From positions 124,001 through 188,000 of the IMG/VR virus record IMGVR_UViG_3300042516_005475: DNA of 64,000 nt. One strand, written 5' to 3'. Below, one piece after another: positions 6,512 to 63,725 of this stretch (position 1 is the first letter of the stretch; each line of letters opens with the position of its first letter). The position numbers were made by a program, and so were the translations under genes. The notes beneath the pieces were generated by a model that saw nothing but the letters and a program-made list of their open reading frames with translations, was not told the DNA's origin and ran no database searches.

Positions 6512-6571
6512 ATTATTATTTATTAAATGTTCCTGTTGATTATTTAGAATTGGTACGTTATAATTTTCTTA

Positions 6572-7282
6572 GTGAAGATTACGCCAAAGTTTCATTACGA
6601 ACCATACAAACGAAAGACTGTTAACGGTTCTCGTCATTATATCTGTAAGGAATATATTTTACCGTCAGTAACTACTATTTTATCTAAAACAAAGGATATG
6701 ACGGCTCTTGACGAATGGGCTGCTCGAATTGGTAAAGATAATGCGGAAGATATTAAGAATCAGGCAGCCGCTCGTGGATCAAAAATGCACAAGCACATTG
6801 AGGATTATATCACAGAAGGTAAAGAAGTCGTAGAAGATGCTAATGAAATTCATACTTCAATGGCCTTGTTGGTGCTTGAAAAAATAAAGCCCCACTTAAA
6901 AGAAATTTGGGGCTCTGAGATTAATTTGTATTATCCTGGTCAATATGCTGGAACTACTGATATTGCTGGGGTTTGGGACGGTAAACCAGCAATCGTTGAT
7001 TTTAAACAGACAAATAAGCCCAAAAAAGAGGAATGGATTGAAGACTATAAATTGCAATTAGTAAGTTACGCAGAGGCTCATAACAAGCTATTTGGTACAG
7101 AAATACAATCTGGCGTAATAGTAATGTGCAGTCAATTCCTAGACTACCAAGAATTTTACATATCTGAAACTGTATATTCATATTATAAGAAACAATGGTG
7201 GGAACGAGTTGATGAGTATTACAATTTAAAAGCCTTCCAAGACGCTCAAGATAGTTGCATCAAAGGAACCAGTTTGGACTGA
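6572..7282 (+). CDS. PD-(D/E)XK exonuclease (RecB/Cas4-like)
   Basis: LPSVTTIL, RGSKMHKHIE, SEINL, AGTTD, IVDFKQT, QLVSYA motifs. Confidence 0.9.
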   Translation: MKITPKFHYEPYKRKTVNGSRHYICKEYILPSVTTILSKTKDMTALDEWAARIGKDNAEDIKNQAAARGSKMHKHIEDYITEGKEVVEDANEIHTSMALLVLEKIKPHLKEIWGSEINLYYPGQYAGTTDIAGVWDGKPAIVDFKQTNKPKKEEWIEDYKLQLVSYAEAHNKLFGTEIQSGVIVMCSQFLDYQEFYISETVYSYYKKQWWERVDEYYNLKAFQDAQDSCIKGTSLD

Positions 7283-7417
7283 TTCAGCATTAATTGCCAA
7301 TGCTGCTAGATACTTGCGTTTAGCCTCTTTTGTACCGGTGGTACAACCAACTTTCTTACCAGAGTTCTTTTTGTAAACGCAATTTTTGTTTCCTACCTTT
7401 TTCGTTTTGTATGGCAT
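7226..7417 (-). CDS. Small basic hypothetical protein
   Basis: ORF track; phage-like composition. Confidence 0.5.
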   Translation of the reverse strand: MPYKTKKVGNKNCVYKKNSGKKVGCTTGTKEAKRKYLAALAINAESVQTGSFDATILSVLEGF

Positions 7418-7422
7418 AAAAC

Positions 7423-7800
7423 TTAGAATCTAGCCATCATTGTACCTAATCTTGGTTTAACAACAGCAACTACTGGTGTTGGAGGGGCCATTTGACCCAT
7501 TTCTTGATGTTTTCCAGCTTCATATTCAAGATAATGAGTAATAGTAGAGATATAGTCTTCTGCAAGAGTTATTTTAGACTGAACCCATGGTTCGAGTTCA
7601 TCAAAGTTAGCTACTAAACTCTTTAATCTCTCAGTATTAGTAGATAAGCTATGTAGCTGAGAGTTAATCATATTTTCAGCCTCTGCCTGGTAATCATCAT
7701 TTTGAGGTTGAGCAACAGGCCCTGGAGGCATTTGAGCCGGTCCGGTTGAAATACCTGTCATACCAACACCACATTCTTTAACAAGCTTATCAAAGTTCAT
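7423..7800 (-). CDS. Hypothetical virion-type protein (LEPWVQSKITLAEDYI motif)
   Basis: Start moved to ATG 7800 (MNFDKLVKE); ATAAATA 12 nt upstream. Confidence 0.6.
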   Translation of the reverse strand: MNFDKLVKECGVGMTGISTGPAQMPPGPVAQPQNDDYQAEAENMINSQLHSLSTNTERLKSLVANFDELEPWVQSKITLAEDYISTITHYLEYEAGKHQEMGQMAPPTPVVAVVKPRLGTMMARF

Positions 7801-7834
7801 ACTATTATTTATTATCGATAGAATAAATAATTGC

Positions 7835-9226
7835 ATGATCAAGTTTGATAACTTTTACTGTTTAATAGAAGGTGGTAATTTGAGTATTGATAACAAGTAT
7901 TTTGCAGATGAAATTAAGCTTCAATTTCTTAATCAAAAGAGCGCTACTAAGTTTGTTAATGATTTTGAGAATCTTTTAAGAGATATTAACAAAATTTACA
8001 AATCTGTATACAATGAGCCTCTCTGGGCACAGCTTGAAACATTGTTAAAGACAAATAAAATCTACGCTGGTTCTGCTAAAATATTCTTTGAATATGTAAA
8101 ACAAGGCAAGTTTGATCTATTTCGCGAGTATAAAAAGACTGTTGGAGATATTGACGTTCAATTTGGCGAAGATTGTGCAGCTAAATTGCGTGATCTTTTC
8201 TATGGGGATAAAGAAACAAACTTAAGTAACGAAACAGCTCCAAAGAGAATTGGTGAGTTCACTTTTATTGGTGAAGGTGGTACAGGAGCTATTCAAATGA
8301 ATACTTTATTTTCCTACAACTTTGGTGTTGATATGAAAACAGGTACTGAGAAAGAAAATGCTCCTACATATATTCAAATTGATTTTGAGCCTGTTGAATT
8401 CGAAAGAGGTTTACCAACTAGATTCAGCCAATTTGCTCATAGCGCTGACTTTAACGATATTCAAAACTCTATCAAAGGAGTGTTTCATAAGTTTTTGTTG
8501 CAAAGTCTTTTAGATGTTTCAAATGAGATTGTTGCTGATATTAAGCTTTATACCTCCAAAGGAAAAACTTCCACAAGAAAAGGAACCAAGCTTACAGTTT
8601 ATTCATTCTCAGTCGATAGAGGTTTTAGAGATAGGTACGTTCCTGGCTTGACTAAACCAGAGGGAGATGTTATACTCAAGAACAACGCTGGTAAGCAGGT
8701 ATATTTCGACATTTCTAAACCAGAAGAAAGAAACGAACTTAAACGCACCGGTTTTGTTACAATAGATCAAAAATCAGATTTATTTAAAGATCTAATAGGA
8801 ACTAATGAGTTAGATAACAATACTCAAATACCTATTAACGTTGAATCGTTAAAATACAGACAAGATTTAGATATTCTGTTTAGATTAATTTTCGGTGTTG
8901 ATCCTGATGATACAGATAGAGAAGGTTTTAATTCTTATACTGGTCTTTTGAATCTAATGTCTAAGTACAAAAACAACCTTAGCAACAAAAACAAAGATTT
9001 TCCATCAATGGTTTATAAGAACTTTGTTGAAAAGATTTATGGTTCAGCAGCTCAATTGCTTTACAAGAGAGACGTAAAGAACCCTAAACCTCAAATCATG
9101 ATAAAAGATTTCGAAACCAAACAATCACCTGTTAATCTTTACCAACAAATTTTTCCTGAAGTTACAAGCGCTTTCACAAAAGATCAGTTTGATAACTTAA
9201 TTAACTCCTACTATACTTCTCACTAA
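7835..9226 (+). CDS. Pol-beta-superfamily nucleotidyltransferase-like protein
   Basis: YAGSA...VGDIDVQ (GS...DxD) motif and distal FIQIDFE. Confidence 0.6.
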   Translation: MIKFDNFYCLIEGGNLSIDNKYFADEIKLQFLNQKSATKFVNDFENLLRDINKIYKSVYNEPLWAQLETLLKTNKIYAGSAKIFFEYVKQGKFDLFREYKKTVGDIDVQFGEDCAAKLRDLFYGDKETNLSNETAPKRIGEFTFIGEGGTGAIQMNTLFSYNFGVDMKTGTEKENAPTYIQIDFEPVEFERGLPTRFSQFAHSADFNDIQNSIKGVFHKFLLQSLLDVSNEIVADIKLYTSKGKTSTRKGTKLTVYSFSVDRGFRDRYVPGLTKPEGDVILKNNAGKQVYFDISKPEERNELKRTGFVTIDQKSDLFKDLIGTNELDNNTQIPINVESLKYRQDLDILFRLIFGVDPDDTDREGFNSYTGLLNLMSKYKNNLSNKNKDFPSMVYKNFVEKIYGSAAQLLYKRDVKNPKPQIMIKDFETKQSPVNLYQQIFPEVTSAFTKDQFDNLINSYYTSH

Positions 9227-9227
9227 C

Positions 9228-18842: not shown

Positions 18843-19222
18843 GGGCCTGTACTGGTTTCGATTTAACAAACTAATATAGTGTTGCACGTAGATGTTGATC
18901 GGTTGGCATCTTAAAAAGCTGATCAAAAGTTAAACGCTGAATATAGCTATGACTACGAGGCTAAGGCTGACTCTTTTGAGTACGACTTCGCTTCTGAATC
19001 CGCTGTAGCCTAAGGGCTGCACCAGACCTACTCTAAACTTGTAAGGTAGAGTCTGCTATACAAGTATCTAGTTACTATGGTAGTAAGTAGCTGGATTATT
19101 GCTACCGAAAATCTGAGTTAGGTTGTTGCTTAGTAACCTCAGATTATACAAAGCAAATAAGCGTGTAGAAGCATTATAGTATTGGGTTAAAGACGCAGGT
19201 TCAACTCCTGCCAGGTCCACCA
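18843..19222 (+). ncRNA. ssrA: tmRNA
   Basis: 5' GGGCCTG pairs with 3' CAGGTCC-A-CCA including G3:U70; GGTTTCGA D-like loop; T arm GCAGG-TTCAACT-CCTGC; tag ORF 18936..19013 AEYSYDYEAKADSFEYDFASESAVA*. Confidence 0.93.
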
Positions 19223-19227
19223 ATTTC

Positions 19228-19315
19228 GGAAGGGTGGCAGAGTGGTTTAATGCAGCGGTCTTGAAAACCGCAGTGGGTAAAACCACCGGGGGTTCGAATC
19301 CCTCTCCTTCCTCCA
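19228..19315 (+). tRNA. tRNA-Ser(TGA)
   Basis: Cloverleaf with long variable arm, loop CTTGAAA, encoded CCA. Confidence 0.92.
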
Positions 19316-19316
19316 T

Positions 19317-19408
19317 GGAAAAGACGTGAATGTCGGTTTTTCACAGCAGTTTGCTAAACTGCCGAGGTGTAACAGCCTCCGTGAGTTCAACTCTCACCTT
19401 TTCCGCCA
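19317..19408 (+). tRNA. tRNA-Ser(GCT)
   Basis: GGAAAAG/CTTTTCC acceptor, loop TTGCTAA, long variable arm, CCA. Confidence 0.9.
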
Positions 19409-19415
19409 TTTCAAT

Positions 19416-19489
19416 TGGGGTATTGCATAATGGTAGTGCAGAGGTCTTTGAAGCCTCTTGCGGGAGTTCGATTCTCTCTACCCCAACCA
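19416..19489 (+). tRNA. tRNA-Gln(TTG)
   Basis: TGGGGTA/TACCCCA acceptor, loop CTTTGAA, CCA. Confidence 0.92.
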
Positions 19490-19495
19490 ATTTAT

Positions 19496-19570
19496 GGGCT
19501 GTTAGTGATAGTGGTAGCACGGGAGCTTTGCAAGCTTTAGGGAAGAGTTCGATTCTCTTACGGTCCACCA
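19496..19570 (+). tRNA. tRNA-Ala(TGC)
   Basis: G3:U70, loop TTTGCAA, CCA. Confidence 0.9.
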
Positions 19571-19583
19571 TAAATATTGTGAT

Positions 19584-19657
19584 GCGGGTATAGCTTAATG
19601 GTAAAGTGCCAGTCTTCCAAACTGGCTATGCGGGTTCGATTCCCGCTACCCGCTCCA
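19584..19657 (+). tRNA. tRNA-Gly(TCC)
   Basis: GCGGGTA/TACCCGC acceptor, loop CTTCCAA, U73, CCA. Confidence 0.93.
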
Positions 19658-23685: not shown

Positions 23686-23720
23686 TTCCTGTTGCAGATT
23701 CCGGGTGCGGCAGCTATTAT
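23686..23720 (+). promoter_or_regulatory. Sigma70-like promoter with TTCCTG box
   Basis: TTCCTG-TTGCAG-17 nt-TATTAT; ATG at 23730. Confidence 0.75.
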
Positions 23721-23729: not shown

Positions 23730-24149
23730 ATGAATGCTAACAATGAAACTGTTGTGAATGTCTCTGACATTTCTGCCACCATCGAAACCATTAAGGCTGT
23801 GAAGTCTATGAATGTCTCTACCGCTACGGTTGGCCGTCCCAAGGGATCTGGCTCCACTCCGAAGCTTGTGTGTATGTTTACGGGAGCTGAGCGCTCTACT
23901 AACCTGACCTATCTCAAGGAGAAGGCAGCTAAGTACAACGTCGATCAATCTCGTATTGTTGAGTCTTACATCTCTAAGCCTGTTCTCAAGGCTCTCCGCG
24001 CAGAGATTAAGGCTGCTAGCGCTGAGGCTGTTACTGAGGATATTGTTGCCAAGGTGCATGCTCAGTTCAATCCTGCTAATGAATGGCAGGCTCCTGAAGT
24101 CAGCGATGTTGTTGATTCTCTTAACTTTAACGGTAAGCATAAGAAGTAA
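23730..24149 (+). CDS. Early protein with AT-hook-like GRPKGS motif; paralog of 29924..30478
   Basis: Shared LxCxxT...YLxxKAxKYNVD...IVxxYIS...LKxLR block. Confidence 0.65.
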   Translation: MNANNETVVNVSDISATIETIKAVKSMNVSTATVGRPKGSGSTPKLVCMFTGAERSTNLTYLKEKAAKYNVDQSRIVESYISKPVLKALRAEIKAASAEAVTEDIVAKVHAQFNPANEWQAPEVSDVVDSLNFNGKHKK

Positions 24150-29923: not shown

Positions 29924-30478
29924 TTATTCACTCTTACCGTTGTACTGCAACAGCTTCACTTTATCAGGATGACTAACACTGTTCTTTCGCAAGAGCTTCA
30001 AACCACTTCGACTAATATAGTACTGAACAATTGTATCAAGATCGACATTGTATTTCTGAGCCTTAGTAGTCAAGTAGTTCAACGGAGCCTTGCGAGTTTG
30101 CTTAGTGATAGGACAAGTAAGAACCTTGTAAGTCTCTTCGTACTTAGCACTACGCTTTTTACCTTTCTTACTAGTCTTCTTAATCTCTTTATTCTTCTCA
30201 AGAATAGCAGCCTTAACCTTGAGATTATCTTTAGCGTCTTGCAAGGTAGTATAAGTCCAACCATGCACACCCCATTGTGAGTCGCTAGGATATACTTCAG
30301 CAGGAGCAATCTTATTACCACCAATAACATAACCGTTATGGCTAGTAATATGAATCAGTTCATAATTAGGACACTTACTACCAGGAGCAATTTTCTCGTA
30401 GACGGCCATGTCACCGTTACGGAGAATTTGTTTGAATTCGAAACCCTTCGACACGAACAACTTTTCGATTTTCTTCAT
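29924..30478 (-). CDS. Basic early protein; C-terminal block paralogous to 23730..24149
   Basis: LTCPITKQTRKAPLNYLTTKAQKYNVDLDTIVQYYISRSGLKLLR. Confidence 0.65.
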   Translation of the reverse strand: MKKIEKLFVSKGFEFKQILRNGDMAVYEKIAPGSKCPNYELIHITSHNGYVIGGNKIAPAEVYPSDSQWGVHGWTYTTLQDAKDNLKVKAAILEKNKEIKKTSKKGKKRSAKYEETYKVLTCPITKQTRKAPLNYLTTKAQKYNVDLDTIVQYYISRSGLKLLRKNSVSHPDKVKLLQYNGKSE

Positions 30479-30488
30479 TACAAAGATT

Positions 30489-30570
30489 AGTATAGACTCT
30501 GCTCAGAGGAAAGTCAACGGTTCTTTTTCCGAAACTTCTGCTTGAGGTTCCTGCCCATAGGAGCCATACT
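30489..30570. promoter_or_regulatory. Divergent pair of TTCCT-box sigma70-like promoters
   Basis: Minus: TTGACT-TTCCT..17..TATACT (30517-30489). Plus: TTGAGG-TTCCTG..17..CATACT (30542-30570). Confidence 0.8.
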
Positions 30571-30588: not shown

Positions 30589-30846
30589 ATGAATTGTATT
30601 TTCTGTAAGAATCCCTTTCATGAAGAGCGAGCTGCTCTCGGCTTTAACTACTGCGTTACCTGCGCAGGCAAGCGACCTGTTGCTGCCTACAAGGGTATCA
30701 TGGTTTTCGGTCATAAGACCGCTGGAACCATGCAGGTTGTTTCTCCGGAGAACTTTGCCGATTACCGCAAGTATAACCCGTATGGTCGCCATACTGGCCG
30801 AGGCTCGGGAATTCACCGAGTTACGAAGACGACAAGTTCGATGTAA
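30589..30846 (+). CDS. Small zinc-finger early protein
   Basis: CIFC...ERAALG...CVTC...GHKTAG. Confidence 0.65.
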   Translation: MNCIFCKNPFHEERAALGFNYCVTCAGKRPVAAYKGIMVFGHKTAGTMQVVSPENFADYRKYNPYGRHTGRGSGIHRVTKTTSSM

Positions 30847-30901: not shown

Positions 30902-30976
30902 GCTCCAATAGCTCAGCGGCAGAGCAAGCTGTTTATAACGGTTAGGCCGTAGGTTCGAATCCTACTTGGAGTACCA
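30902..30976 (+). tRNA. tRNA-Ile(TAT)
   Basis: Stem AGCTG/CGGTT, loop TT-TAT-AA, canonical T arm, A73, CCA. Confidence 0.85.
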
Positions 30977-30981
30977 TTAAT

Positions 30982-31067
30982 GCCACGGTGGTGAAATGGC
31001 AGACACAAGAGACTTAAAATCTCTAGCCGTAAAAAGCGTGCCGGTTCGAGTCCGGCCCGTGGTACCA
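30982..31067 (+). tRNA. tRNA-Leu(TAA)
   Basis: Loop CTTAAAA, long variable arm, CCA. Confidence 0.92.
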
Positions 31068-31133
31068 AATTTGAAAATAAAAGTTGCTTTCTAATAAAAA
31101 GCAGTTATTATTTAAACGTTCTTTAAATCTTAT

Positions 31134-31210
31134 GTCCTCGTAGCTCAGTTGGATAGAGCTTTCGCCTTCTAAGCGAAAAGTCACAGGTTCGACTCCTGTC
31201 GAGGACACCA
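31134..31210 (+). tRNA. tRNA-Arg(TCT)
   Basis: GTCCTCG/CGAGGAC acceptor, loop CTTCTAA, CCA. Confidence 0.92.
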
Positions 31211-31225
31211 TTTTTGTTCTTTAAC

Positions 31226-31301
31226 GGTCCATTCGTCTAATGGTTTAGGACAGCAGGTTTTCAACCTGTTAATAGGAGTTCGATTCTCCTATGGACTACC
31301 A
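31226..31301 (+). tRNA. tRNA-Glu(TTC)
   Basis: GGTCCAT/ATGGACT acceptor, loop TTTTCAA, CCA. Confidence 0.9.
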
Positions 31302-31309
31302 AATTTAAC

Positions 31310-31382
31310 TGCGGGATGGAGCAGTGGCAGCTCGTCTGGCTCATAACCACGAAGGTCGAGGGTTCGAGTCCCTCTCCCGCTA
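31310..31382 (+). tRNA. tRNA-fMet(CAT), initiator-like, lacking encoded CCA
   Basis: U1:U72 mismatch, GGAGCAG..GCTCGT initiator-like D arm, loop CTCATAA; irregular anticodon stem; followed by GAG instead of CCA. Confidence 0.82.
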
Positions 31383-32116
31383 GAGTGAGCGCAAACTACT
31401 TGCACGTAGTTCACTTGCACACCTTATTGGTGACCAAATGTTTGCAACCTAGAGTTTATTATATCAATAATAATATTGAGGTAAGTGTAACTTGATTGTT
31501 CTTTGAAATATTTTTGCTGTGTTGTATCTATAATACACAAATCAATTTTATTCGCTATACACTGATAAAATTTATTGTTATCATTTTTTTGTATTTGATT
31601 CAATATTTTGTCACCGTAAATTGATTCATAATGAAAAATACCATTCAATTCAAATGCTAATCCTAATTTAGGTAAATATATATCTAATTCAGAATATATA
31701 GCTTCTTTACTATTAAACAAAATAGTTAACTCAGGGTATTTTTCTTTTAACTTATTTTCAATCCATATCTCAAGCTTAGATCTTCTCGTGCCATGTTTTT
31801 TGTGAGTATTGTTATACCTAGCAGAGCAGTTTTTACTACAAAAAGTATTTTTTCTGGATTTGTATGGTAAAGAAATACCACACTGTTTACATTTTCGTGG
31901 TTGAGATTCATAAAATGTGTGTATTTCTGCTGTTTTTGTACTATGATACTTACCTCTACCGTTTGTGTGGTTAACAGTATTATTGTAAGAATACCAACAA
32001 CTACGTTTATGACTATTTAAAGCTAACAAATTTTTAAGTTCTTTTTTGCACTTCGAGCAGGAGACCATATAATATTATTTATGAAAAATGGATTTCAAAT
32101 CCCTCTCCCGCTACCA
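31369..32116 (-). mobile_element. Free-standing endonuclease cassette bounded by a 14-bp direct repeat of the tRNA-fMet 3' end
   Basis: TCCCTCTCCCGCTA at 31369..31382 and at 32100..32113; the second copy is preceded by TTCAAA and followed by CCA. Confidence 0.75.
31424..32068 (-). CDS. Zinc-finger plus Vsr-like PD-(D/E)XK homing endonuclease
   Basis: CSKC..HxxxC, CKQC..FCSKNC; SKLE...ELDIYLPKLGLAFELNGIFHY. Confidence 0.8.
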   Translation of the reverse strand: MVSCSKCKKELKNLLALNSHKRSCWYSYNNTVNHTNGRGKYHSTKTAEIHTFYESQPRKCKQCGISLPYKSRKNTFCSKNCSARYNNTHKKHGTRRSKLEIWIENKLKEKYPELTILFNSKEAIYSELDIYLPKLGLAFELNGIFHYESIYGDKILNQIQKNDNNKFYQCIANKIDLCIIDTTQQKYFKEQSSYTYLNIIIDIINSRLQTFGHQ

Positions 32117-32209
32117 ATGTGAGTTTGTCAGTGAGTACTCATTAAAAACTGAATGGTGGAGGTGGCTAGAAATAGCCTCTAGAGTTAAGATTCTCTTTAA
32201 AAAATCTAT

Positions 32210-40580: not shown

Positions 40581-40634
40581 ACTTTTTTATTTATTCCTGT
40601 TGCATTTAGTTTATTTAGAGAATATCATATTCAT

Positions 40635-40841: not shown

Positions 40842-40917
40842 GGGTCATTAACTCAAAGGTTAGAGTAAGGGCCTCATAAGCCCCTAGTTGTAGGTTCGAA
40901 TCCTACATGGCCCACCA
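40842..40917 (+). tRNA. tRNA with CAT anticodon (elongator Met or Ile2)
   Basis: GGGTCAT/ATGGCCC acceptor, loop CTCATAA, A73, CCA; Met versus Ile2 not resolvable by eye. Confidence 0.88.
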
Positions 40918-43938: not shown

Positions 43939-46035
43939 GTGAAGTTTCAAGATTATCTCATTGAGTCCTGGAAAGATTATAAAGTAAGTAACAGCCCCAA
44001 AGTACTTTTGTACGACTTTTACTTGCTTAGTTATCTTTCCTCTCTTATTTTAGATCCAGGTACCAGAAAAGATGTTGGTTTAACAGGTGTTGGTTATTCT
44101 GGTAAATTCTTTGGAAGAGAAGGTAAAGAGCTCGATGAAGATATTCAAAACGCACAGAGAAAGCTATTACCATTCTTAGGTAACAAGCTATCTCAGGCTT
44201 TATTTTTAGCCGTTTGCGCAGAGCTACGCCATGTATTAGATAGAAATCAACAATGGAGTGAGTTTAAGCATACAAAGAACAAAACATTTAGAAACTATAT
44301 AAGAAACTTAGAGTTCATGAATAATAAAGAACTCAAAGATTTCCAATCTAAAAGAAACATAGAAAATCCAAGATTACAGGTTCAAAGCCAAGGTTATAAA
44401 ACATCTTACCAGGCTGCAAAGAAGTCTATCAAAGAAACAGGTGGCAATGTAATTGACTTTGCCAGAATGGCTGCAGACGCCTTTGAAGATTTAAACTGGT
44501 CAGCATCATACGGAGGAGATAAGTGGGCTGAAATTGCTAAAGGTTATGTAGATTTGCGCCTGGCTCTCAACAATTATAATCCTGAGGCTCCCAGCCCTTC
44601 TTCTGAGTCAGCAGAAAGGTTAATTGCTGCTATTGATCATGCATTTGATTTAGAGCACAATACTGGTACAGTATTAAACAAAGTAAAGTACTTTGATGTT
44701 AAGGGATATGATTGGATTAAGACTGCCTTGGATGATAAGAGAGATGCTAACATGTATGACATAGCCAAGAAGGCTAGTAGCGACATGAGAAAGCTAGGTC
44801 AAGAAGTGTTAAAGGTGGCTGGTATGCAGGATAAGCAGATGAAAAAAGTACCTGCAGAGGCTGGTATTCCAACAAAGAAAATAAAGCTGGCTGGGTTTAC
44901 CTCGAAGAAATATGAAGGTGAACATATTAAAGATCTCAGCAGTCTTCCTATAGGTAGTCTCATAACAGATGATTATAGCGAGTATGTAGCTAAAGTTTTA
45001 AATATAAAAAATGCAGAGAAAAAGGTTACGGTTAAATTTATAGCTATAAAAAATAAAAATGATGAAAAATGGTTAGGAAAAACTCATAGATATAGTTTTA
45101 ACTATATTAAAGAAAAATTACACATAGTTAAAAAACAAGATGAGGCTAATCTCTTAAAAGATTACTTTGTAGATCCTAGTTATAAACCGGAAGTTACTAG
45201 CACTTCATCTGCCATAAAAATTGGTGACACAGTAAAAGTTAAGAATAATAACATGGAGGGTACTGTAGAATTAATTAATAATGAGGGAGATAATGAAGCA
45301 CCCTTAGTTCAAATTAAAGTAATTAAAGCTATTCACCCTGAGCTTGTAGGTATTAAAACCTGGTACCCAGCAGACCATCTTGAGAAGATATCTCCATCAA
45401 AGGTAGTTAAGCTACAAGGTTTTGGTAGTAAAAAGCCAGCAAAAAATGAGGCATTATTATTTTCAACAGAAATTGAAAGCCCATATATGTTAACTATAGG
45501 TTCAATTCTAATTAATATCCATAGTTCTGATCTATATATTGTTCAAATGGTTAATGGGCCTGGAAATTATATAAAGATAAAATTAGTTGCATCGAACGAC
45601 GCTTTGGAGTTTCCTAATTATACTGAACCTGAATTATACAATGGTGCTACAATTGCGAGAGATTTTAGATTAATAAAAAACAAAGATAAGGAAAGAGCCT
45701 TTGCTTCATATGAGTTTATAAAATTATCTTCTGCGAGTAGAGAAGCATCTAAGGCTGCCAAGGCAGATGAGCCAGCCCCTAGAGAAAGAGATGAAAATTT
45801 AAAAGTTGGTTTTTACTTTGTAATTAATAATGAAACAAACATTGTTCAAATAACAGCTCTTCCAAGAGGTTATGTTGAATATAAAATAGTAGCAGCTACT
45901 AAAAAATATAAAGAGTTGGAAGGTGTTTCTAGCGGTATGCCTAAAGATATGTTCATAGATTCAATTGACTTTGCTATTAATCCTAAATCAACTGAATTTA
46001 ATTACTATATTAGACAATTCAAAAATAAACGTTGA
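43939..46035 (+). CDS. Large putative head-packaged protein; N-domain paralogous to 50814..54314
   Basis: MKFQDYLIE; LYDFYLLS, SYGGDKWAEIAKGY, AIDHAFDLEHNTG. Confidence 0.65.
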   Translation: MKFQDYLIESWKDYKVSNSPKVLLYDFYLLSYLSSLILDPGTRKDVGLTGVGYSGKFFGREGKELDEDIQNAQRKLLPFLGNKLSQALFLAVCAELRHVLDRNQQWSEFKHTKNKTFRNYIRNLEFMNNKELKDFQSKRNIENPRLQVQSQGYKTSYQAAKKSIKETGGNVIDFARMAADAFEDLNWSASYGGDKWAEIAKGYVDLRLALNNYNPEAPSPSSESAERLIAAIDHAFDLEHNTGTVLNKVKYFDVKGYDWIKTALDDKRDANMYDIAKKASSDMRKLGQEVLKVAGMQDKQMKKVPAEAGIPTKKIKLAGFTSKKYEGEHIKDLSSLPIGSLITDDYSEYVAKVLNIKNAEKKVTVKFIAIKNKNDEKWLGKTHRYSFNYIKEKLHIVKKQDEANLLKDYFVDPSYKPEVTSTSSAIKIGDTVKVKNNNMEGTVELINNEGDNEAPLVQIKVIKAIHPELVGIKTWYPADHLEKISPSKVVKLQGFGSKKPAKNEALLFSTEIESPYMLTIGSILINIHSSDLYIVQMVNGPGNYIKIKLVASNDALEFPNYTEPELYNGATIARDFRLIKNKDKERAFASYEFIKLSSASREASKAAKADEPAPRERDENLKVGFYFVINNETNIVQITALPRGYVEYKIVAATKKYKELEGVSSGMPKDMFIDSIDFAINPKSTEFNYYIRQFKNKR

Positions 46036-46065
46036 TTCTGCATAGAACCCCGTTATAATACAGAA

Positions 46066-46601: not shown

Positions 46602-46920
46602 GCGATCGTAGCTCAACGGTAGAGCATCGGCCTTTAATAGGAGCGCTTATAGAGTGATCTATAAGATGAACCGAGCCATATGCGGGGACCTCCTTAGAGC
46701 CTTGAGTACCGTAAGGTAAAAATCTCAAGGATTGGACAATCCGCAGGAAACCAGTAGATTAGTACGCTGTTGGTCATAAATTGGGATCCTCAGAGACTTT
46801 ACGCTTGGCATCTCTAAAAGAGATGATGATAAAGTCCAGACTACAACGGAAACGGCTAGTGAAAACTAGAGTAGTAAGTTAAGCCGGGTGTTGTGGATTC
46901 GAATTCCACCGGTCGCACCA
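46602..46920 (+). tRNA. tRNA-Lys(TTT) interrupted by a group I intron (exons 46602..46634 and 46879..46920)
   Basis: Acceptor GCGATCG/CGGTCGC, A73, CCA; anticodon stem TCGGC/GCCGG; spliced loop CTT|TTAA; 75-nt mature tRNA. Confidence 0.88.
46635..46878 (+). ncRNA. Group I self-splicing intron, 244 nt, no internal ORF
   Basis: P1 CUU/GAG with U.G; P2 hairpin; P3 CCGAGC/GCTTGG; P TGCGGGGA; Q AATCCGCAGG; R TCAGAGACT; P7 GACTTT/AAAGTC; P8 CATCTCT/AGAGATG; P9; terminal G at 46878. Confidence 0.92.
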
Positions 46921-47216: not shown

Positions 47217-47361
47217 TTATCTGTAGCTCAGCGGTAAGAGCAGAGTTCCTAACTATGGGTAAAGCCCTTAAAAATCTTATGTTAGGTCGTAAAATTGCCT
47301 TGTACTGATATTTTACAAGTTGTAAAAGTAGCCGTTGGTTCGATTCCAACCAGATGAACAA
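47217..47361 (+). ncRNA. tRNA-like RNA with a ~90-nt structured insert replacing the anticodon arm
   Basis: TTATCTG/CAGATGA acceptor, GCTC-AGCGGTAA-GAGC D arm, GTTGG-TTCGATT-CCAAC T arm, ends ACAA. Confidence 0.6.
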
Positions 47362-47736: not shown

Positions 47737-47765
47737 TTGCAGTTCCTGTTACTTTCAGTTAAACT
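47737..47765 (+). promoter_or_regulatory. TTCCTG-box sigma70-like promoter
   Basis: TTGCAG-TTCCTG..17..TAAACT. Confidence 0.75.
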
Positions 47766-47786: not shown

Positions 47787-48089
47787 ATGAACAAAGAAAT
47801 CGTTAACATCGTTCGGGACCGCAAGGGTAATCCTCGTGGTTATGTTGTCGCTACTAAGCTCGAGAATGGTAAGGTTGGCCTTGGCTGGTCTTATGTTAAT
47901 GTTAAGGCTGGAGATCGCTTCGACAAGTATCTCGGCCAAAAGATCGCCATGAATCGAGCCTTTACTGGTACTGATAAGTTTGTGCCTCGTGACGTGATGA
48001 AGGTGATTGATCGGGTGTCTTCTCGCGCTGTGAAGTACTTCAAGGCTCCTATTGATGCCTACCCTCAGCAAGTTGTTACTGTTGCGTAA
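47787..48089 (+). CDS. Early hypothetical protein
   Basis: ORF track; strong C/T-ending codon bias. Confidence 0.65.
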   Translation: MNKEIVNIVRDRKGNPRGYVVATKLENGKVGLGWSYVNVKAGDRFDKYLGQKIAMNRAFTGTDKFVPRDVMKVIDRVSSRAVKYFKAPIDAYPQQVVTVA

Positions 48090-49736: not shown

Positions 49737-49765
49737 TTGCCTTTCCTGTTCAGGTAAATTATACT
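49737..49765 (+). promoter_or_regulatory. TTCCTG-box sigma70-like promoter
   Basis: TTGCCT-TTCCTG..17..TATACT; ATG at 49777. Confidence 0.78.
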
Positions 49766-49776: not shown

Positions 49777-50793
49777 ATGGAACGTAAACTTGCTAGTGTT
49801 CGTAAGATTCAAGAAATTAAGCTCATCGAAGGTGCTGACAAGATTTGCGCCTACCGAGTTGATGGTTGGTGGGTTGTAGATAGTATTAATAAGTATAATG
49901 TTGGTGATCTTGTGGTCTACTACGAGATTGATAGCTTTCTACCAATCACTCCTCAATTTGAGTTTCTCCGCAAGTCTTCATTCAAGAAGATGGGTGAACG
50001 TGAAGGCTTTAGGCTCAAGACTATTAAGCTCAAGGGCCAGCTCAGCCAAGGTCTCTTGACTAAAATTCCAATTGGTCTCATTGTACCTCCTAAGGAAAAT
50101 GATGACATGACTGAGTTGCTCGGCATTATCAAGTATGAGCCTCCTATTCCTGCTGAGCTAGCTGGTGAGATCAAGGGTTCGTTCCCTAGCTTCATCCCTA
50201 AGACTGATGAGGTTCGTATTCAGAACTTTGAAAGGGAAGTTGGGGTTTCTATCGCTAATGAGCGAGTTTACGCTACTGAGAAGGTTGATGGTACTAGCTT
50301 TACTTGTTATGTTAACAATGGTGAGTTTGGTGTTTGTGGTCGCAATTGGGAGTTGAAGGAGACTCAAGGTAACTCTCTTTGGCGAATGGCTAACAAGCTC
50401 AATCTTCGTGAGAAGCTCTTGAGTCTCAATCTTAACATTGCCTTGCAGGGTGAGTTGTTTGGTAGTGGAATTAATGGTAATTGGTACAAGCTCAATGATC
50501 ACCGACTCATGTTCTTTACTGGATATGATATTGATAATCAAAAGCGATTGCAGTTTAATGAGTTAATGAACTTGTTGGATAGTTTGCAGTTGGAAAGTGT
50601 TCCTGTTATTGATTATATTGCTACTATTCCAGATGGTACTATGGCTGAGATCGTTGAGTGGTCTTTGTTGTATGCTGAGTCTGAGAGTAATATTAATGCT
50701 GCTGTAGAGAACGAAGGTGTTGTTATTCGTGGTCTTGAGAAGGAGTTTAGCTTCAAGGCTATTAGTAACAAGTGGCTCCTTAGTGAAAAGTAA
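49777..50793 (+). CDS. RNA ligase (Rnl2-like, DRB0094-type with N-terminal tRNA-binding/OB domain)
   Basis: RKLASVRKI..IEGAD, YYEIDS, LKGQLSQG, PKTDEVRIQN, TEKVDGTS, QGELFG, EGVVIR, FKAISNKWLL. Confidence 0.9.
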   Translation: MERKLASVRKIQEIKLIEGADKICAYRVDGWWVVDSINKYNVGDLVVYYEIDSFLPITPQFEFLRKSSFKKMGEREGFRLKTIKLKGQLSQGLLTKIPIGLIVPPKENDDMTELLGIIKYEPPIPAELAGEIKGSFPSFIPKTDEVRIQNFEREVGVSIANERVYATEKVDGTSFTCYVNNGEFGVCGRNWELKETQGNSLWRMANKLNLREKLLSLNLNIALQGELFGSGINGNWYKLNDHRLMFFTGYDIDNQKRLQFNELMNLLDSLQLESVPVIDYIATIPDGTMAEIVEWSLLYAESESNINAAVENEGVVIRGLEKEFSFKAISNKWLLSEK

Positions 50794-54314: not shown

Positions 54315-54348
54315 TTGATTCTTAAAAATCATTGGTTATAATAATTAC

Positions 54349-54929: not shown

Positions 54930-54958
54930 TGGACTTTCCTCTGCAGGTCCTTCATAAT
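54930..54958 (+). promoter_or_regulatory. TTCCT-box sigma70-like promoter
   Basis: TGGACT-TTCCT..17..CATAAT; ATG at 54966. Confidence 0.7.
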
Positions 54959-55425: not shown

Positions 55426-55454
55426 GCCGCTGGAGAAATCTGGCGGCATTTTTT
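55426..55454 (+). terminator. Rho-independent terminator
   Basis: gccgctgga-gaaa-tctggcggc followed by T-tract. Confidence 0.8.
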
Positions 55455-56387: not shown

Positions 56388-56393
56388 ACGAGG

Positions 56394-56429
56394 TTCCTGC
56401 TGGCGGTTCCTACGGTTTGCAGCCATAAT
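56394..56429 (+). promoter_or_regulatory. TTCCT-box sigma70-like promoter
   Basis: TTCCTGC-TGGCGG-TTCCT..17..CATAAT; ATG at 56439. Confidence 0.7.
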
Positions 56430-56438: not shown

Positions 56439-56651
56439 ATGAAGACGATGCAAATGGAAAAAGCCCTCGACTCAATCTCCGAGCAGCTGTTTGATCGTAG
56501 CCGCTCGCTTTCAATGTTCAATCTCGAATGCCCTACTTGCGGTGGAACCATCAGCAAGTTTCGAGACGAACTCTCTGAGCGCGAATACCGTATCTCGGGT
56601 ATGTGCCAAAAGTGTCAGGATGAAGTCTTTTCCGAGATTCCTGAAGAATAA
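56439..56651 (+). CDS. Small zinc-ribbon early protein
   Basis: CPTC...FRDELSEREYRISGMCQKCQD. Confidence 0.7.
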   Translation: MKTMQMEKALDSISEQLFDRSRSLSMFNLECPTCGGTISKFRDELSEREYRISGMCQKCQDEVFSEIPEE

Positions 56652-56653: not shown

Positions 56654-56682
56654 TTGAGGTTCCTGAGCTTTCGGCCTATACT
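56654..56682 (+). promoter_or_regulatory. TTCCTG-box sigma70-like promoter
   Basis: TTGAGG-TTCCTG..17..TATACT. Confidence 0.78.
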
Positions 56683-56700: not shown

Positions 56701-56940
56701 ATGAACTTGTTTACTTACAACGAAACTGAAAACTGGTACGAGTACTTTGACAAAGTCAATCTGCAGCTCACAGTTTACTCTGTGGAAGTTGAAAGCAACT
56801 GTGTAACTGTTCTTAATGGTCGTTCACCTATTCTTCAGAAGAGTATGGAGATGGCTAAGTCTAATATTAACTGGACTAAAGAAGAATCTTTCGGTATTGA
56901 GTTCATTAAAATGTTGAATCACGCTATTTCTAATAACTAA
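56701..56940 (+). CDS. Small hypothetical protein
   Basis: ORF track. Confidence 0.55.
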   Translation: MNLFTYNETENWYEYFDKVNLQLTVYSVEVESNCVTVLNGRSPILQKSMEMAKSNINWTKEESFGIEFIKMLNHAISNN

Positions 56941-57369: not shown

Positions 57370-57395
57370 GGCTACAGAGAAATCTGTAGCCTTTT
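57370..57395 (+). terminator. Rho-independent terminator
   Basis: ggctacaga-gaaa-tctgtagcc followed by T-tract. Confidence 0.8.
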
Positions 57396-61994: not shown

Positions 61995-62072
61995 AATAAT
62001 ACTGATACTTATATTAAGCCTATATTTTTCAAGCTAAGTTGATTATTTAAAATAAAGGACTATAATATTCCT

Positions 62073-62499: not shown

Positions 62500-62538
62500 C
62501 CTTCTTGATTCTTTATTTTCTCTCTATAAAATTATTTT

Positions 62539-62730: not shown

Positions 62731-62912
62731 TTAAAGAAGATATTGAACAATTAAAGTCTTATAGAGCTATGCTATCTAAGATTAGTGAGGTAGTAGAAGA
62801 GTTCTGTGATACAGAAGAAAGTACTACTCTCGATTGTATTTTAGAGATGAAGGCTCAGCTTTTCGAGGCAAAGGCTCAGCTTCTCCGCAAAAGAAAAACG
62901 ATTCAATTCTGA
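62727..62912 (+). CDS. Small hypothetical protein
   Basis: ORF track. Confidence 0.5.
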   Translation: MIKEDIEQLKSYRAMLSKISEVVEEFCDTEESTTLDCILEMKAQLFEAKAQLLRKRKTIQF

Positions 62913-62920
62913 AGAAAGGC

Positions 62921-62972
62921 TTGCCGTTCCTGGCAGGAACCTGTATACTTTTTGTAGAAAAATTAATAAATA
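62921..62972 (+). promoter_or_regulatory. Tandem TTCCTG-box promoter and late ATAAATA element
   Basis: TTGCCG-TTCCTG..17..TATACT (62921-62949); ATAAATA 62966-62972; ATG 62978. Confidence 0.75.
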
Positions 62973-62977
62973 ATTGT

Positions 62978-63247
62978 ATGCCTTACAATAACGATTTCAA
63001 CCGTATTTCTAAGAGCTATACTTCTCTTAAGGAGAACGAGGCTGCAATGAAGATGCTGTTTGAGAATTTTGATATTACTGAAGAAGAATTTAAGAATGCT
63101 CCTCTTATCTCTACAATTGAAGAAATGAACACGCTGCTAGAAAAGCGAGGCGATATTTCTTGTAGTGTTTCTATTAACGAGAGCAATGGTAAAGATACAT
63201 CAGTTGTTACTTTGAAGTACTTGGCACAAGGAGAAGATATTGTATGA
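62978..63247 (+). CDS. Acidic hypothetical protein
   Basis: Start moved to ATG 62978. Confidence 0.55.
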   Translation: MPYNNDFNRISKSYTSLKENEAAMKMLFENFDITEEEFKNAPLISTIEEMNTLLEKRGDISCSVSINESNGKDTSVVTLKYLAQGEDIV

Positions 63248-63687
63248 GTATTATTTTAGAGGCAGTTAAAGAGAGTATCTCCTTTAATTATAACAAAGGG
63301 GATAGAATCACGGTAACTAGTGCTTTCTTAAAAGACAAACGAAAACTAGATCCAAAGATTAGAGCTGATTTGCAGAGACTACTTCGTACCTGGCAGCGCA
63401 GAGGGGGAGTAGATTTTCCTATTTTCGAATTTAAGAACCGTAGAAAGTTTCCAATGGACTTTGGAGATAGCAGAGGAATAGTTAAATCTTGTATGCCTCA
63501 ATATGGCATTGAATTGCGTAAGAGAGTACCTCCAGTACATCTTAACGTGTTTATTACTGAAACTAATCCTATCTTTGGTAACCCAAAGACTCCTAACCCC
63601 AAGGGTAAGCTATTCATTTTTGACCGAATTTTCGATAATTACGACAAATATAGGAATTATATCTCAGAAAAATACGAAGGCTGCTAA
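63244..63687 (+). CDS. Hypothetical protein
   Basis: ORF track. Confidence 0.5.
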   Translation: MSIILEAVKESISFNYNKGDRITVTSAFLKDKRKLDPKIRADLQRLLRTWQRRGGVDFPIFEFKNRRKFPMDFGDSRGIVKSCMPQYGIELRKRVPPVHLNVFITETNPIFGNPKTPNPKGKLFIFDRIFDNYDKYRNYISEKYEGC

Positions 63688-63690
63688 CTT

Positions 63691-63725
63691 TTCCTGTTGC
63701 AGTTCCTGTCCGAGGCATCTATACT
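63691..63725 (+). promoter_or_regulatory. TTCCTG-box sigma70-like promoter
   Basis: TTCCTG-TTGCAG-TTCCTG..17..TATACT. Confidence 0.8.

What the first reader, a model, noticed from the sequence alone, without database searches (positions are those of the whole stretch)
6530..63725. Sigma70-like early promoters share a TTCCT(G) box hugging the -35 hexamer
Seen: a TTG/TGG-type -35, a 17-nt spacer beginning TTCCT, and a TATACT/CATAAT-type -10 at 30517(-), 30542, 35291, 47737, 49737, 54930, 56401, 56654, 62921 and 63697 (TTCCG variant at 23692). The box also sits at or just 5' of the -35 at 6530, 23686, 35284, 40594, 56394 and 63691, giving a roughly 12-bp repeat. Downstream genes are mostly short, with C-ending codon bias, and most start 7-11 nt after the -10. 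Known: T4 MotA boxes and extended early promoters use similar positional elements. Inference: a binding site for a phage activator or a host-specific RNAP contact that defines the early regulon.
Basis: partly seen in the sequence, partly recalled or inferred. Interest (0 to 1): 0.62.

Follow-up and report, generated by a model that had tools for sequence, protein, structure and literature searches.

The report
Phage promoter class with GGTTCC box
A 230-kb T4-like lake-water phage that has no MotA/AsiA carries about 19 copies of a distinct, conserved promoter cassette: a sigma70-type -35/-10 pair with an invariant GGTTCC(TG) box next to the -35, which most likely binds a still-unidentified regulator and also serves as a crossover point for gene shuffling.

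Summary
The strict composite TKG-N3-TTCCY-N12-YATAMT occurs 8 times in the window against 0.00 expected. It occurs 11 times in the 230-kb genome against 0.03 expected. I curated 19 sites, all between genome 147.7 and 203.5 kb, each just 5' of a co-oriented gene; the downstream proteins are unrelated.

The box is the invariant core of a 13-bp block, cTKGmnGGTTCCTG, at about -36 to -24. In five related metagenomic phages TTCC never changes, while the rest of the spacer differs at 0.24 per site. In 5 of 19 sites the box is the left half of a 17-bp dyad, GGTTCC-N5-GGAACC. In 8 of 19 a direct copy lies 12 bp upstream.

The phage is a distant T4-like myovirus. It has a gp55 late sigma factor but no MotA, AsiA or gp33. 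It has three promoter classes: canonical sigma70-like leaderless promoters without the box, the box class, and TAAATAA late-type promoters.

Box-driven genes have the highest GC3 and the lowest A3, which argues for early expression. My best reading is a regulator-binding site inside host-RNAP promoters; I lean towards an operator for early shut-off, with a MotA-like activator as the close rival. The cassettes also behave like PeSLs, since one indel junction lies inside the box. No regulator was identified and no transcript data exist.

The parts
23692..23720 (+). Box promoter, variant box ATTCCGG and -10 TATTAT. A direct upstream copy TTCCTG lies at 23686-23691. Drives the 139-aa ORF 23730-24149; the ATG is 9 nt after the -10.
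   Evidence: kept in relatives L031 and L032
30489..30517 (-). Box promoter (TTGACT, TTCCTC, TATACT), one of a back-to-back divergent pair. Drives the 184-aa ORF 29924-30478.
   Evidence: conserved in L031 and L032, replaced by a canonical promoter in L033
30542..30570 (+). Box promoter (TTGAGG, TTCCTG, CATACT). Drives the 85-aa CxxC...CxxC ORF 30589-30846 and probably the tRNA cluster 30902-33565.
   Evidence: conserved in L031, L032 and L033
35284..35319 (+). Upstream copy TTCCTC (35284-35289) plus box promoter 35291-35319 (TTGCAG, TTCCTG, TATATT). Drives the 59-aa ORF 35329-35508.
   Evidence: the orthologue in L031 has a full GTTCC-N5-GGAAC dyad
47737..47765 (+). Box promoter (TTGCAG, TTCCTG, TAAACT). 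Drives the 100-aa ORF 47787-48089.
49737..49765 (+). Box promoter (TTGCCT, TTCCTG, TATACT). Drives the RNA ligase gene 49777-50793.
54930..54958 (+). Box promoter (TGGACT, TTCCTC, CATAAT). The ATG is 7 nt after the -10. The unit ends at terminator 55426-55447.
   Evidence: the orthologue in L020 has the GGAACC second half-site
56394..56429 (+). Upstream copy GGTTCCTGC (56392-56400) plus box promoter 56401-56429 (TGGCGG, TTCCTA, CATAAT). Drives the 70-aa zinc-ribbon ORF 56439-56651.
56654..56682 (+). Box promoter (TTGAGG, TTCCTG, TATACT) with the conserved short leader gattatagaaaataagat before the ATG. Drives ORF 56701-56940. The unit ends at terminator 57370-57391.
62921..62949 (+). Box promoter carrying the full dyad GTTCC-TGGCA-GGAAC (62926-62940) in its spacer. 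Drives ORF 62978-63247.
   Evidence: identical dyad in L023
63691..63725 (+). Upstream copy TTCCTG (63691-63696) plus box promoter 63697-63725 (TTGCAG, TTCCTG, TATACT). Drives ORF 63745-64080, which runs past the window end.
6530..6564 (+). TTCCTG copy directly 5' of an otherwise canonical promoter with an AT-rich spacer (TTGATT-N17-TATAAT). Only the upstream position of the box is occupied.
40594..40628 (+). TTCCTG copy directly 5' of TTGCAT-N17-TATCAT, with an ATG 6 nt after the -10. Only the upstream position of the box is occupied.
55426..55447 (+). Intrinsic-terminator-like hairpin plus T-run that closes the unit started at 54930.
57370..57391 (+). Intrinsic-terminator-like hairpin plus T-run that closes the unit started at 56401 and 56654.

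Best explanation
These sites form a separate promoter class of a distant T4-like freshwater myovirus.

Host RNA polymerase with its primary (sigma70-type) sigma reads the TKG of the -35 and the YATAMT -10, which lie exactly 17 nt apart. This step is inferred from the sequence.

The invariant GGTTCC(TG) block at -31 to -24 is a binding half-site for a dedicated, sequence-specific, probably dimeric DNA-binding protein encoded by the phage. That protein has not been identified.

Optional extra half-sites would set the affinity of each promoter:
- an inverted GGAACC at -20 to -15, which gives a 17-bp dyad centred at -23;
- a direct copy at -43 to -38.

Box-driven genes look like the earliest class by codon usage, and the dyad sits between the -35 and the -10. 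I therefore commit to negative control: the promoters fire with unmodified host polymerase at the start of infection, and a Cro-like phage repressor later turns them down together. The direction of control is the weakest step in this account.

Because the roughly 60-bp cassette is repeated about 19 times, it also serves as a homology patch for recombination. That recombination inserts, deletes and swaps the small genes behind it, as PeSL cassettes do.
For: **Real and non-random**
- 8 matches in the window against 0.00 expected; 11 in the genome against 0.03.

**Promoter placement**
- All 19 sites lie just 5' of a co-oriented ORF. The 19 downstream proteins are essentially unrelated.
- Units end at intrinsic terminators.

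**Selection on the box itself**
- Across 11 orthologous promoter sets in five phages, mismatch per site is 0.008 in the -10, 0.00 in TTCC, 0.24 in the rest of the spacer and 0.25-0.41 upstream.
- The box persists in relatives down to 61% protein identity.

**Protein-site geometry**
- GGAACC at the fixed register occurs in 5 of 19 sites against 0.48 expected. The upstream direct copy occurs in 8 of 19 against 0.45.
- A metagenome scan found 20 further distinct dyad promoters. Their N5 centres vary (CCTGA, TGGCA, TGCCA, GGGCA and others) and their downstream genes differ.
- The second half-site comes and goes between orthologues.

**Not required by the polymerase**
- At least 20 canonical promoters in the same genome lack the box.

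**Early timing**
- GC3/A3 is 0.47/0.13 for box genes, 0.35/0.22 for canonical-promoter genes and 0.26/0.33 for late genes.
- Ten of 21 phage tRNAs have U34 anticodons.
- The tRNA cluster lies behind box promoter 30542.

**Cassette shuffling**
- L024:7613 is a chimera of the promoters at G000 190634 and 193532, with the crossover inside the box. It accounts for a difference of about 2.9 kb between the two phages.
Against: - No transcription start site, timing or binding data exist. No RNA run holds this phage.
- No candidate regulator was found. There are no Pfam or PHROG DNA-binding hits among the genes checked, and two folded candidates gave no structural match.
- Only about a quarter of the promoters have the full dyad.
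- The strict, identical register of the box in all copies is what one expects of an element read together with RNA polymerase, that is, an activator or sigma contact. The somewhat weak -35 hexamers (TGGCGG, TTGAGG) point the same way.
- The codon-usage argument could reflect horizontal origin or high expression rather than timing.
- Concerted evolution of the cassettes by recombination could inflate their apparent conservation within one genome. It cannot explain the contrast between the box and the rest of the spacer across orthologues.
Confidence: 0.4

Rival explanations
1. Middle or delayed-early promoters under positive control. A phage-encoded activator, a functional analogue of T4 MotA or lambda CII, binds the GGTTCC box beside or around a weak -35 and recruits host polymerase. 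It would replace the missing MotA/AsiA system.
For: - The box is centred near -28, as the MotA box is near -30, and has a strictly fixed register to the -10 in all 19 copies.
- The -35 hexamers are weak, especially TGGCGG and TGGAGG, and those promoters tend to carry the upstream direct copy flanking the -35, as CII sites do.
- Downstream genes include DNA ligase, RNA ligase and a DnaB-like helicase, which are typical middle functions.
- The phage has gp55 but no MotA or AsiA. How such T4-like phages run a middle mode is stated to be unknown (PMC5780444).
Against: - Codon usage places box genes before the canonical-promoter genes, not after them.
- The TTG of the -35 is retained, unlike in T4 middle promoters.
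- A dyad centred at -23, between the -35 and the -10, is an unusual place for an activator when the spacer is 17 bp.
- No activator candidate was found.
Confidence: 0.3
2. The box is read by RNA polymerase itself. It would be an extended -35 or spacer element preferred by the host's primary sigma, by an alternative host sigma factor, or by polymerase modified by a virion-delivered protein. No separate DNA-binding regulator would be involved.
For: - The register is fixed and the block from C(-36) to G(-24) is contiguous with the -35.
- There is a C-rich tract just 5' of the -10, at index 19-22.
- No regulator was found.
Against: - At least 20 strong canonical promoters in the same genome lack the box.
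- An orthologous gene uses either type.
- The inverted second half-site and the direct upstream copy are hard to explain by a single sigma contact.
- No sigma70-family r2/r4 gene other than gp55 is present in the phage.
- The host is unknown, so its promoter logo could not be compared.
Confidence: 0.13
3. The box is mainly a recombination signal or cassette signature. It would be kept because it mediates PeSL-type cassette exchange, either as a homology patch or as the site of a dedicated recombination protein, with little role in transcription control.
For: - The crossover of the L024 chimera lies inside the box.
- The same roughly 60-bp cassette stands in front of many unrelated genes across 18 metagenome contigs.
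- PeSL cassettes behave this way in other T4-like phages (PMC2839356, PMC4122927).
Against: - Homology-driven exchange needs no invariant 4-6 bp core. The spacer next to the box drifts freely while TTCC does not, which points to base-specific recognition.
- One junction is an anecdote.
- The two roles are not exclusive.
Confidence: 0.12
4. The dyad acts as an RNA or DNA hairpin in read-through transcripts, as a processing, stability or termination signal.
For: Four of 19 spacers fold significantly better than shuffles, with z below -2 and up to -10.4 kcal/mol.
Against: - Fifteen of 19 do not fold better than shuffles.
- The left arm is invariant even where no right arm exists.
- No T-run follows the stem.
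- Real terminators lie elsewhere.
Confidence: 0.05

Closest known systems
PeSL / PmSL cassettes of T4-like phages (Arbiol et al. 2010, PMC2839356; Comeau et al. 2014, PMC4122927)
   Same: - A conserved composite promoter cassette repeated many times in the plastic, ORFan-rich part of a T4-like genome.
- Each copy heads a small gene.
- Indel junctions between relatives fall inside the cassette.
- The consensus is clade-specific.
   Different: - PeSLs carry a stem-loop or terminator just upstream of the promoter and a Shine-Dalgarno site. Here the dyad lies inside the -35/-10 spacer in only a minority of copies, terminators are separate, and there is no Shine-Dalgarno site.
- PeSL promoters are plain sigma70 or MotA-box promoters. 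Here an extra invariant GGTTCC box is present.
T4 middle promoters (MotA box at -30 plus sigma70 -10; MotA/AsiA sigma appropriation)
   Same: - A sigma70-type -10 combined with a phage-specific box at about -30 at a fixed distance.
- Defines a regulon in a T4-like phage that has a gp55-dependent late class.
   Different: - The box sequence is unrelated (GGTTCCTG against TGCTTtA).
- The TTG of the -35 is retained.
- There are no motA or asiA genes. The one weak AsiA lead was rejected by structure.
- Dyad and direct-repeat copies occur.
Lambda-type operators (17-bp partial dyads for Cro/CI overlapping PR and PL)
   Same: - A 17-bp dyad with a non-conserved centre lying within an early promoter.
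- Half-sites of graded quality.
   Different: - About 19 dispersed promoters rather than two operator clusters.
- Most have only one good half-site.
- No repressor gene was identified.
- The phage looks strictly lytic and T4-like.
Lambda CII-dependent promoters (TTGC-N6-TTGC direct repeats flanking the -35)
   Same: Direct repeats on both sides of a weak -35 hexamer in 8 of 19 copies.
   Different: - The repeat period is 12 bp, not 10.
- The repeat sequence is different.
- The upstream copy is optional.
- A CII homologue was not searched for specifically.

Membership tests
Sigma70-type (-35/-10) bacterial promoter | TTGACA-like and TATAAT-like hexamers 16-18 nt apart, upstream of a gene | tested here: met
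   TKG...YATAMT with a 17-nt spacer in 19 of 19 sites. Mean match is 3.6/6 for the -35 and 4.8/6 for the -10. All lie 5' of co-oriented ORFs.
Sigma70-type (-35/-10) bacterial promoter | Transcription starts 6-8 nt after the -10 | not testable with these tools
   No RNA run holds the sequence.
T4 middle (MotA-dependent) promoter | MotA box (a/t)(a/t)(a/t)TGCTTtA centred at -30 | tested here: not met
   The consensus at that position is GGTTCCTG.
T4 middle (MotA-dependent) promoter | motA and asiA genes in the phage | tested here: not met
   phrog_1345 gave no match. phrog_1166 gave E = 0.17. Pfam AsiA scored 19.4 bits, below its cut-off of 25, on a 94-aa ORF. The confident model of that ORF (pLDDT 93) contains a beta-sheet and matches no PDB chain.
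T4 middle (MotA-dependent) promoter | Sigma70 -10 at a fixed distance and loss of the -35 consensus | tested here: inconclusive
   The -10 is present at a fixed distance. The -35 keeps T, K and G, but positions 4-6 deviate to mnG.
PeSL / PmSL cassette | Conserved composite promoter repeated in hyperplastic regions in front of variable small ORFs | tested here: met
   19 copies within 56 kb of small unrelated genes. The same cassette precedes different genes in 18 metagenome contigs.
PeSL / PmSL cassette | Indel or replacement junctions between relatives lie in the cassette | tested here: met
   The chimeric promoter at L024:7613. This is a single case.
PeSL / PmSL cassette | Stem-loop or terminator immediately upstream of the promoter, and a Shine-Dalgarno site at the 3' end | tested here: not met
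   The dyad lies inside the spacer, and only 4 of 19 fold significantly. Terminators are elsewhere. GGAG occurs in 6 of 234 gene upstream regions.
Repressor operator overlapping a promoter (lambda Cro/CI type) | Dyad-symmetric site of about 17 bp between or over the -35 and -10 | tested here: inconclusive
   A full dyad occurs in 5 of 19 sites here and in 20 further metagenomic copies. The remainder have one half-site.
Repressor operator overlapping a promoter (lambda Cro/CI type) | A cognate DNA-binding repressor encoded by the phage | tested here: inconclusive
   No HTH or other DNA-binding family appeared among the small proteins scanned. Most ORFs have no hit at all, and only the top 25 families per batch were visible.
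T4-type late promoter (context, not the finding) | TATAAATA-like -10 without a -35, plus a gp55 late sigma factor | tested here: met
   TAAATAA lies 4-5 nt before 22 start codons. A gp55 homologue scores E = 1e-27 and is 31-40% identical to cyanophage and pelagiphage gp55. A gp33 homologue was not found.

The most novel reading that the evidence does not exclude
The box class is the cis element of a previously undescribed early/middle switch in T4-like phages that have no MotA/AsiA. A new phage-encoded factor would read GGTTCC half-sites at -31 to -26. It would act either as a sigma-appropriation-like activator or as a global early-gene repressor. It would operate in a phage that expresses many of its genes as leaderless mRNAs from all three promoter classes.
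Probability: 0.3. Interest if true: 0.7.

Novelty: new variant of a known kind. Interest (0 to 1): 0.5.

Why it matters
T4-like phages of environmental hosts such as cyanophages and pelagiphages have gp55 late transcription but no MotA/AsiA. How they separate early from middle transcription is an acknowledged gap (PMC5780444, citing Doron 2016 and Thompson 2016).

This phage clade offers three sharply distinguishable promoter classes in a single genome. One of them is defined by an invariant box with dyad and direct-repeat variants and is conserved across many lake metagenomes. That provides a precise DNA bait for finding the missing regulator. It also provides a ready classifier for predicting the temporal programme of uncultured relatives.

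The same cassettes show that PeSL-type modular shuffling extends to distant, uncultured T4-like lineages.

Tried and rejected
- **Bacteroidota-type promoters.** I considered these because the genes have no Shine-Dalgarno sites. TAnnTTTG is not enriched near gene starts, and the phage uses canonical TTGACA/TATAAT-like promoters. Rejected.
- **TTCCTG hexamer enrichment.** Not enriched on its own. The cluster at 116-120 kb is a collagen-like gene.
- **Gene duplication as the source of the repeat.** The downstream proteins are unrelated, apart from one shared 45-aa domain.
- **Phage-encoded sigma70-family factor or RNA polymerase.** Pfam r2, r4 and Rpb1 are negative.
- **AsiA-like 94-aa ORF** (genome 18995-19279, minus strand). 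Sub-threshold hits only; the model is not all-helical and matches no PDB chain. Rejected.
- **The 184-aa protein at 29924-30478** and the domain it shares with the 139-aa protein. No family hit, no Atlas lead and no fold match. There is no support for DNA binding, but this is not evidence against it.
- **Hairpin as a general feature.** Rejected.
- **Sigma32-like reading** (CTTGA at the -35, a C-rich tract before the -10) and **sigma54-like reading.** Inspected by eye only. Neither explains the invariant TTCC, and I did not pursue them.
- **Relatives in isolate phages and IMG/VR.** No megablast hit. One protein scan of viral contigs found nothing and another found only a 48% relative.
- **Batch PHROG and Pfam scans of about 300 ORFs by the alignment route.** Only the top 25 families per batch are shown, so the regulator inventory is incomplete.
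- **Reads.** No RNA runs exist.
- **Caveat on my own ORF calls.** My crude ORF caller probably picks the wrong strand at genome 191.2-194.7 kb, because relatives have + strand genes there. Strand maps should not be trusted in that stretch.

Full report
**Setting**

The window is bases 124,001-188,000 of a 230,047-bp IMG/VR virus record rated complete. It is about 34% G+C. The window holds 21 tRNA genes and a tmRNA. The sequence is found in about 20 lake-water metagenome studies, and no RNA run holds it. No isolate phage is close at the DNA level.

Family scans show a distant T4-like myovirus. It has a gp23-type capsid protein, portal, tail sheath, gp25 and gp15. It also has a clamp loader, UvsX, gp46/47-like SbcCD, DNA polymerase, PhoH and QueC/QueD/GTP cyclohydrolase.

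A gp55 late sigma homologue sits next to the gp47/46 homologues (phrog_234, E = 1e-27; ORF). It is 31-40% identical to cyanophage and pelagiphage gp55. MotA, gp33 and Pfam sigma70 regions 2 and 4 are absent, and AsiA gives only noise-level hits.

**The observation**

- The strict composite TKG-N3-TTCCY-N12-YATAMT occurs 8 times in the window against 0.00 in 100 shuffles.
- It occurs 11 times in the genome against 0.03 in Markov simulations.
- PWM iteration and curation give 19 sites between genome 147.7 and 203.5 kb. Eleven are in the window and eighteen are on the + strand.
- All have a 17-nt spacer, and all lie just 5' of a co-oriented ORF.
- The 19 downstream proteins are unrelated, apart from one 45-aa domain shared by two of them. 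The repeat is therefore not a by-product of gene duplication.
- The bare hexamer TTCCTG is not enriched. A pile-up at 116-120 kb is a collagen-like gene.

**Anatomy**

- Information content is highest in one contiguous block, c-T-K-G-m-n-G-G-T-T-C-C-T-G, and in the -10, which is T/C-A-T-A-A/C-T. A C-rich tract lies just 5' of the -10.
- With the -10 placed at -12 to -7, GGTTCC lies at -31 to -26.
- In 5 of 19 sites an inverted GGAACC lies at -20 to -15, giving a 17-bp dyad, GGTTCC-N5-GGAACC. Shuffled spacers give 0.48.
- In 8 of 19 sites a direct TTCCTG copy lies 12 bp upstream, flanking the -35. The expectation is 0.45.
- The spacers are G+C-rich: 0.56, against 0.28 in the phage's other promoters.
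- By the first-ATG rule, the start codon follows the -10 by 7-11 nt in 8 sites, 18-23 nt in 7 sites and further in 4. At 193247 an ATG at 18 opens an ORF shorter than the 30-aa cut-off.
- Several of the 18-23 nt sites share the leader gattgcagaaaataagat.

**Conservation**

The DNA ligase gene behind one box promoter has graded relatives in metagenomes.

- Contigs whose ligase is 95, 85, 80 and 77% identical keep box promoters at orthologous positions.
- Contigs at 67-62% identity show only canonical promoters around the gene.
- A second anchor, the 184-aa protein, shows the box in relatives at 83, 70 and 61% identity. In the 61% relative the 184-aa gene itself has switched to a canonical TTGACT-N17-TATAAT promoter.

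Mean pairwise mismatch per site over 11 orthologous promoter sets:

| Segment | Mismatch per site |
|---|---|
| -10 hexamer | 0.008 |
| TKGNNG | 0.07 |
| TTCC | 0.00 |
| Rest of spacer | 0.24 |
| Upstream flank | 0.25-0.41 |

The second half-site appears and disappears between orthologues.

A metagenome-wide scan for the dyad form returned 18 contigs with 20 distinct promoters. Their N5 centres vary and their downstream genes differ. This pattern indicates base-specific constraint on GGTTCC rather than mere homogenisation of a repeat.

**Context: three promoter classes**

1. *Canonical sigma70-like promoters.*
   - They have the form TTGAnn, an AT-rich spacer of 16-17 nt, then TATAAT.
   - They occur all over the genome. 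In 20 of them the start codon begins 7-8 nt after the -10.
   - An unbiased count shows TATAAT-like hexamers peaking 6 nt before start codons: 19 against a background of about 3.
   - These promoters therefore predict leaderless mRNAs.
2. *The box class.*
3. *TAAATAA late-type promoters.*
   - The motif lies 4-5 nt before 22 start codons.
   - Its 8-mers fall in intergenic DNA in 33 of 66 occurrences against a 7.5% expectation.
   - It matches the T4-type late promoter core and the presence of gp55.

Shine-Dalgarno motifs are essentially absent: GGAG occurs in 6 of 234 upstream regions. The Bacteroidota -7 motif is not enriched.

**Timing clue**

Third-position composition of the first gene after each promoter class:

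| Class | GC3 | A3 |
|---|---|---|
| Box promoters | 0.47 | 0.13 |
| Canonical leaderless | 0.35 | 0.22 |
| Late (TAAATAA) | 0.26 | 0.33 |
| All genes | 0.33 | 0.28 |

- Box genes differ from all genes at p = 2e-7.
- Ten of the 21 phage tRNAs have U34 anticodons that serve A-ending codons.
- Box promoter 30542 heads the main tRNA cluster.
- Box genes thus look least dependent on phage tRNAs, which argues that they are expressed first. Horizontal origin or high expression could give the same signal.
- Downstream functions include RNA ligase, ATP-dependent DNA ligase, a DnaB-like helicase and many ORFans.
- Two box-promoter units in the window end at good intrinsic terminators.

**Mechanism**

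The polymerase does not need the box, because many strong promoters in the same genome lack it and orthologous genes swap promoter type. A separate protein that reads GGTTCC half-sites is therefore the simplest account.

*Points favouring an operator for shutting off early transcription*
- The 17-bp dyad has a free centre and lies between the -35 and the -10.
- The codon evidence points to early expression.

*Points favouring a MotA- or CII-like activator*
- The box keeps a strictly fixed register.
- The -35 hexamers are weak.
- A direct copy flanks the -35 in some promoters.

I put 0.40 on the repressor-operator version and 0.30 on the activator version. Other readings:

- **RNAP-intrinsic recognition.** 0.13.
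- **A purely recombinational role.** 0.12.
- **A hairpin role.** 0.05; unlikely, since only 4 of 19 spacers fold better than shuffles.

**Candidate regulators**

- A model of the 184-aa protein (pLDDT 79) matched no solved structure.
- A sub-threshold AsiA hit on a 94-aa ORF was rejected. Its confident model (pLDDT 93) contains a beta-sheet and matches no PDB chain.
- No regulator is identified.

**Relation to known systems**

The closest described objects are the PeSL and PmSL cassettes of T4-like phages. These are conserved promoter cassettes repeated in hyperplastic regions, and they mediate insertion, deletion and exchange of ORFans (PMC2839356, PMC4122927).

The same behaviour appears here. 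The promoter at L024:7613 matches the flank of G000 190634 upstream (65-100% identity) and the flank of G000 193532 downstream (75-100%). The crossover lies inside the box, and it accounts for a difference of about 2.9 kb between the two phages.

The differences from PeSLs are:
- there is no stem-loop or terminator just upstream of the promoter;
- there is no Shine-Dalgarno site;
- there is an additional invariant box.

T4 middle promoters resemble the class in position only. The box sequence, the retained TTG and the absence of motA and asiA all fail the membership test.

**Verdict**

- I rate it as a new variant of a known kind, with moderate interest. The interest comes mainly from the precise handle it gives on how MotA-less T4-like phages organise early transcription.

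Noticed in passing
genome-wide; in the window e.g. 46032-46059, 54315-54342, 62039-62066, 62505-62532: Canonical sigma70-like promoters (TTGAnn, AT-rich 16-17 nt spacer, TATAAT) whose -10 ends exactly 6 nt before the start codon. There are 20 clear cases. Unbiased counts give a peak of 19 against a background of about 3. This predicts widespread leaderless mRNAs in a T4-like phage.
   Followed up: partly
genome 1-130 kb on both strands; in the window e.g. 3585(-), 6522(-), 32081(-), 18818(+): The motif aTAAATAAt lies 4-5 nt before 22 start codons, and half of its occurrences are intergenic. It resembles the T4 late promoter core and would also give leaderless transcripts. A gp55 homologue is present at genome 28581-29162, but no gp33 was found.
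   Followed up: partly
whole genome: Shine-Dalgarno motifs are essentially absent (GGAG in 6 of 234 upstream regions), and the upstream regions are A-rich and G-poor. The promoters are nevertheless canonical sigma70-type, not Bacteroidota-type. The host is unknown.
   Followed up: partly
genes behind box promoters compared with other genes: There is a codon-usage gradient by promoter class. GC3 is 0.47, 0.35 and 0.26 and A3 is 0.13, 0.22 and 0.33 for box, canonical and late genes. Often only the first gene after a box promoter is G+C3-rich, so promoter plus gene looks like one compositional unit.
   Followed up: partly
window 18843-19222; 19228-19657; 30902-33565; 37502-37576; 40842-40917: A phage-encoded tmRNA (Rfam 113 bits) with an unusual tag peptide, plus 21 tRNA genes. 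Ten of the tRNAs have U34 anticodons.
   Followed up: no
window 46624-46859 and 47217-47358: A group I intron hit (70.9 bits) lies in the gap after the 698-aa and 130-aa ORFs. A 142-nt stretch also scores as a tRNA with an insertion of about 70 nt.
   Followed up: no
L024:7400-7800 against genome 190434-190834 and 193332-193732: A chimeric box promoter. Its upstream half comes from the promoter after the DNA ligase gene and its downstream half from the promoter of the 101-aa gene. The crossover lies inside the box and corresponds to an indel of about 2.9 kb between relatives.
   Followed up: yes
L033:580-720 against window 30478-30520: In a 61%-identity relative the orthologue of the 184-aa gene has exchanged its box promoter for a canonical TTGACT-N17-TATAAT promoter. 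The divergent partner promoter keeps the box.
   Followed up: partly
window 30489-30570: Two box promoters stand back to back on opposite strands, with only 24 nt between their -35 hexamers. This arrangement is conserved in relatives L031 and L032.
   Followed up: partly
genome 116443-120564: A 1373-aa collagen-like (G-x-y repeat) gene. It accounts for the local excess of TTCCTG and CCTGG words.
   Followed up: no
genome 18995-19279 (-): A 94-aa protein conserved only in this phage clade. It has an invariant CGxCKRKN motif and a very confident predicted alpha/beta fold (pLDDT 93), with no match in the PDB.
   Followed up: partly
window 30589-30846: An 85-aa protein with a CxxC-x17-CxxC pattern. 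By eye it recalls TraR/DksA-type zinc ribbons, but Pfam and PHROGs gave no hit.
   Followed up: no
genome 1-124 kb (outside the window): QueC, QueD-like and GTP cyclohydrolase I genes suggest 7-deazaguanine modification of the phage DNA. A cREC_REC domain protein is also present.
   Followed up: no
genome 191250-194737: My greedy ORF caller placed minus-strand genes here. Box promoters and the gene calls of relative L023 indicate + strand genes, and high GC3 keeps the antisense frames open.
   Followed up: partly
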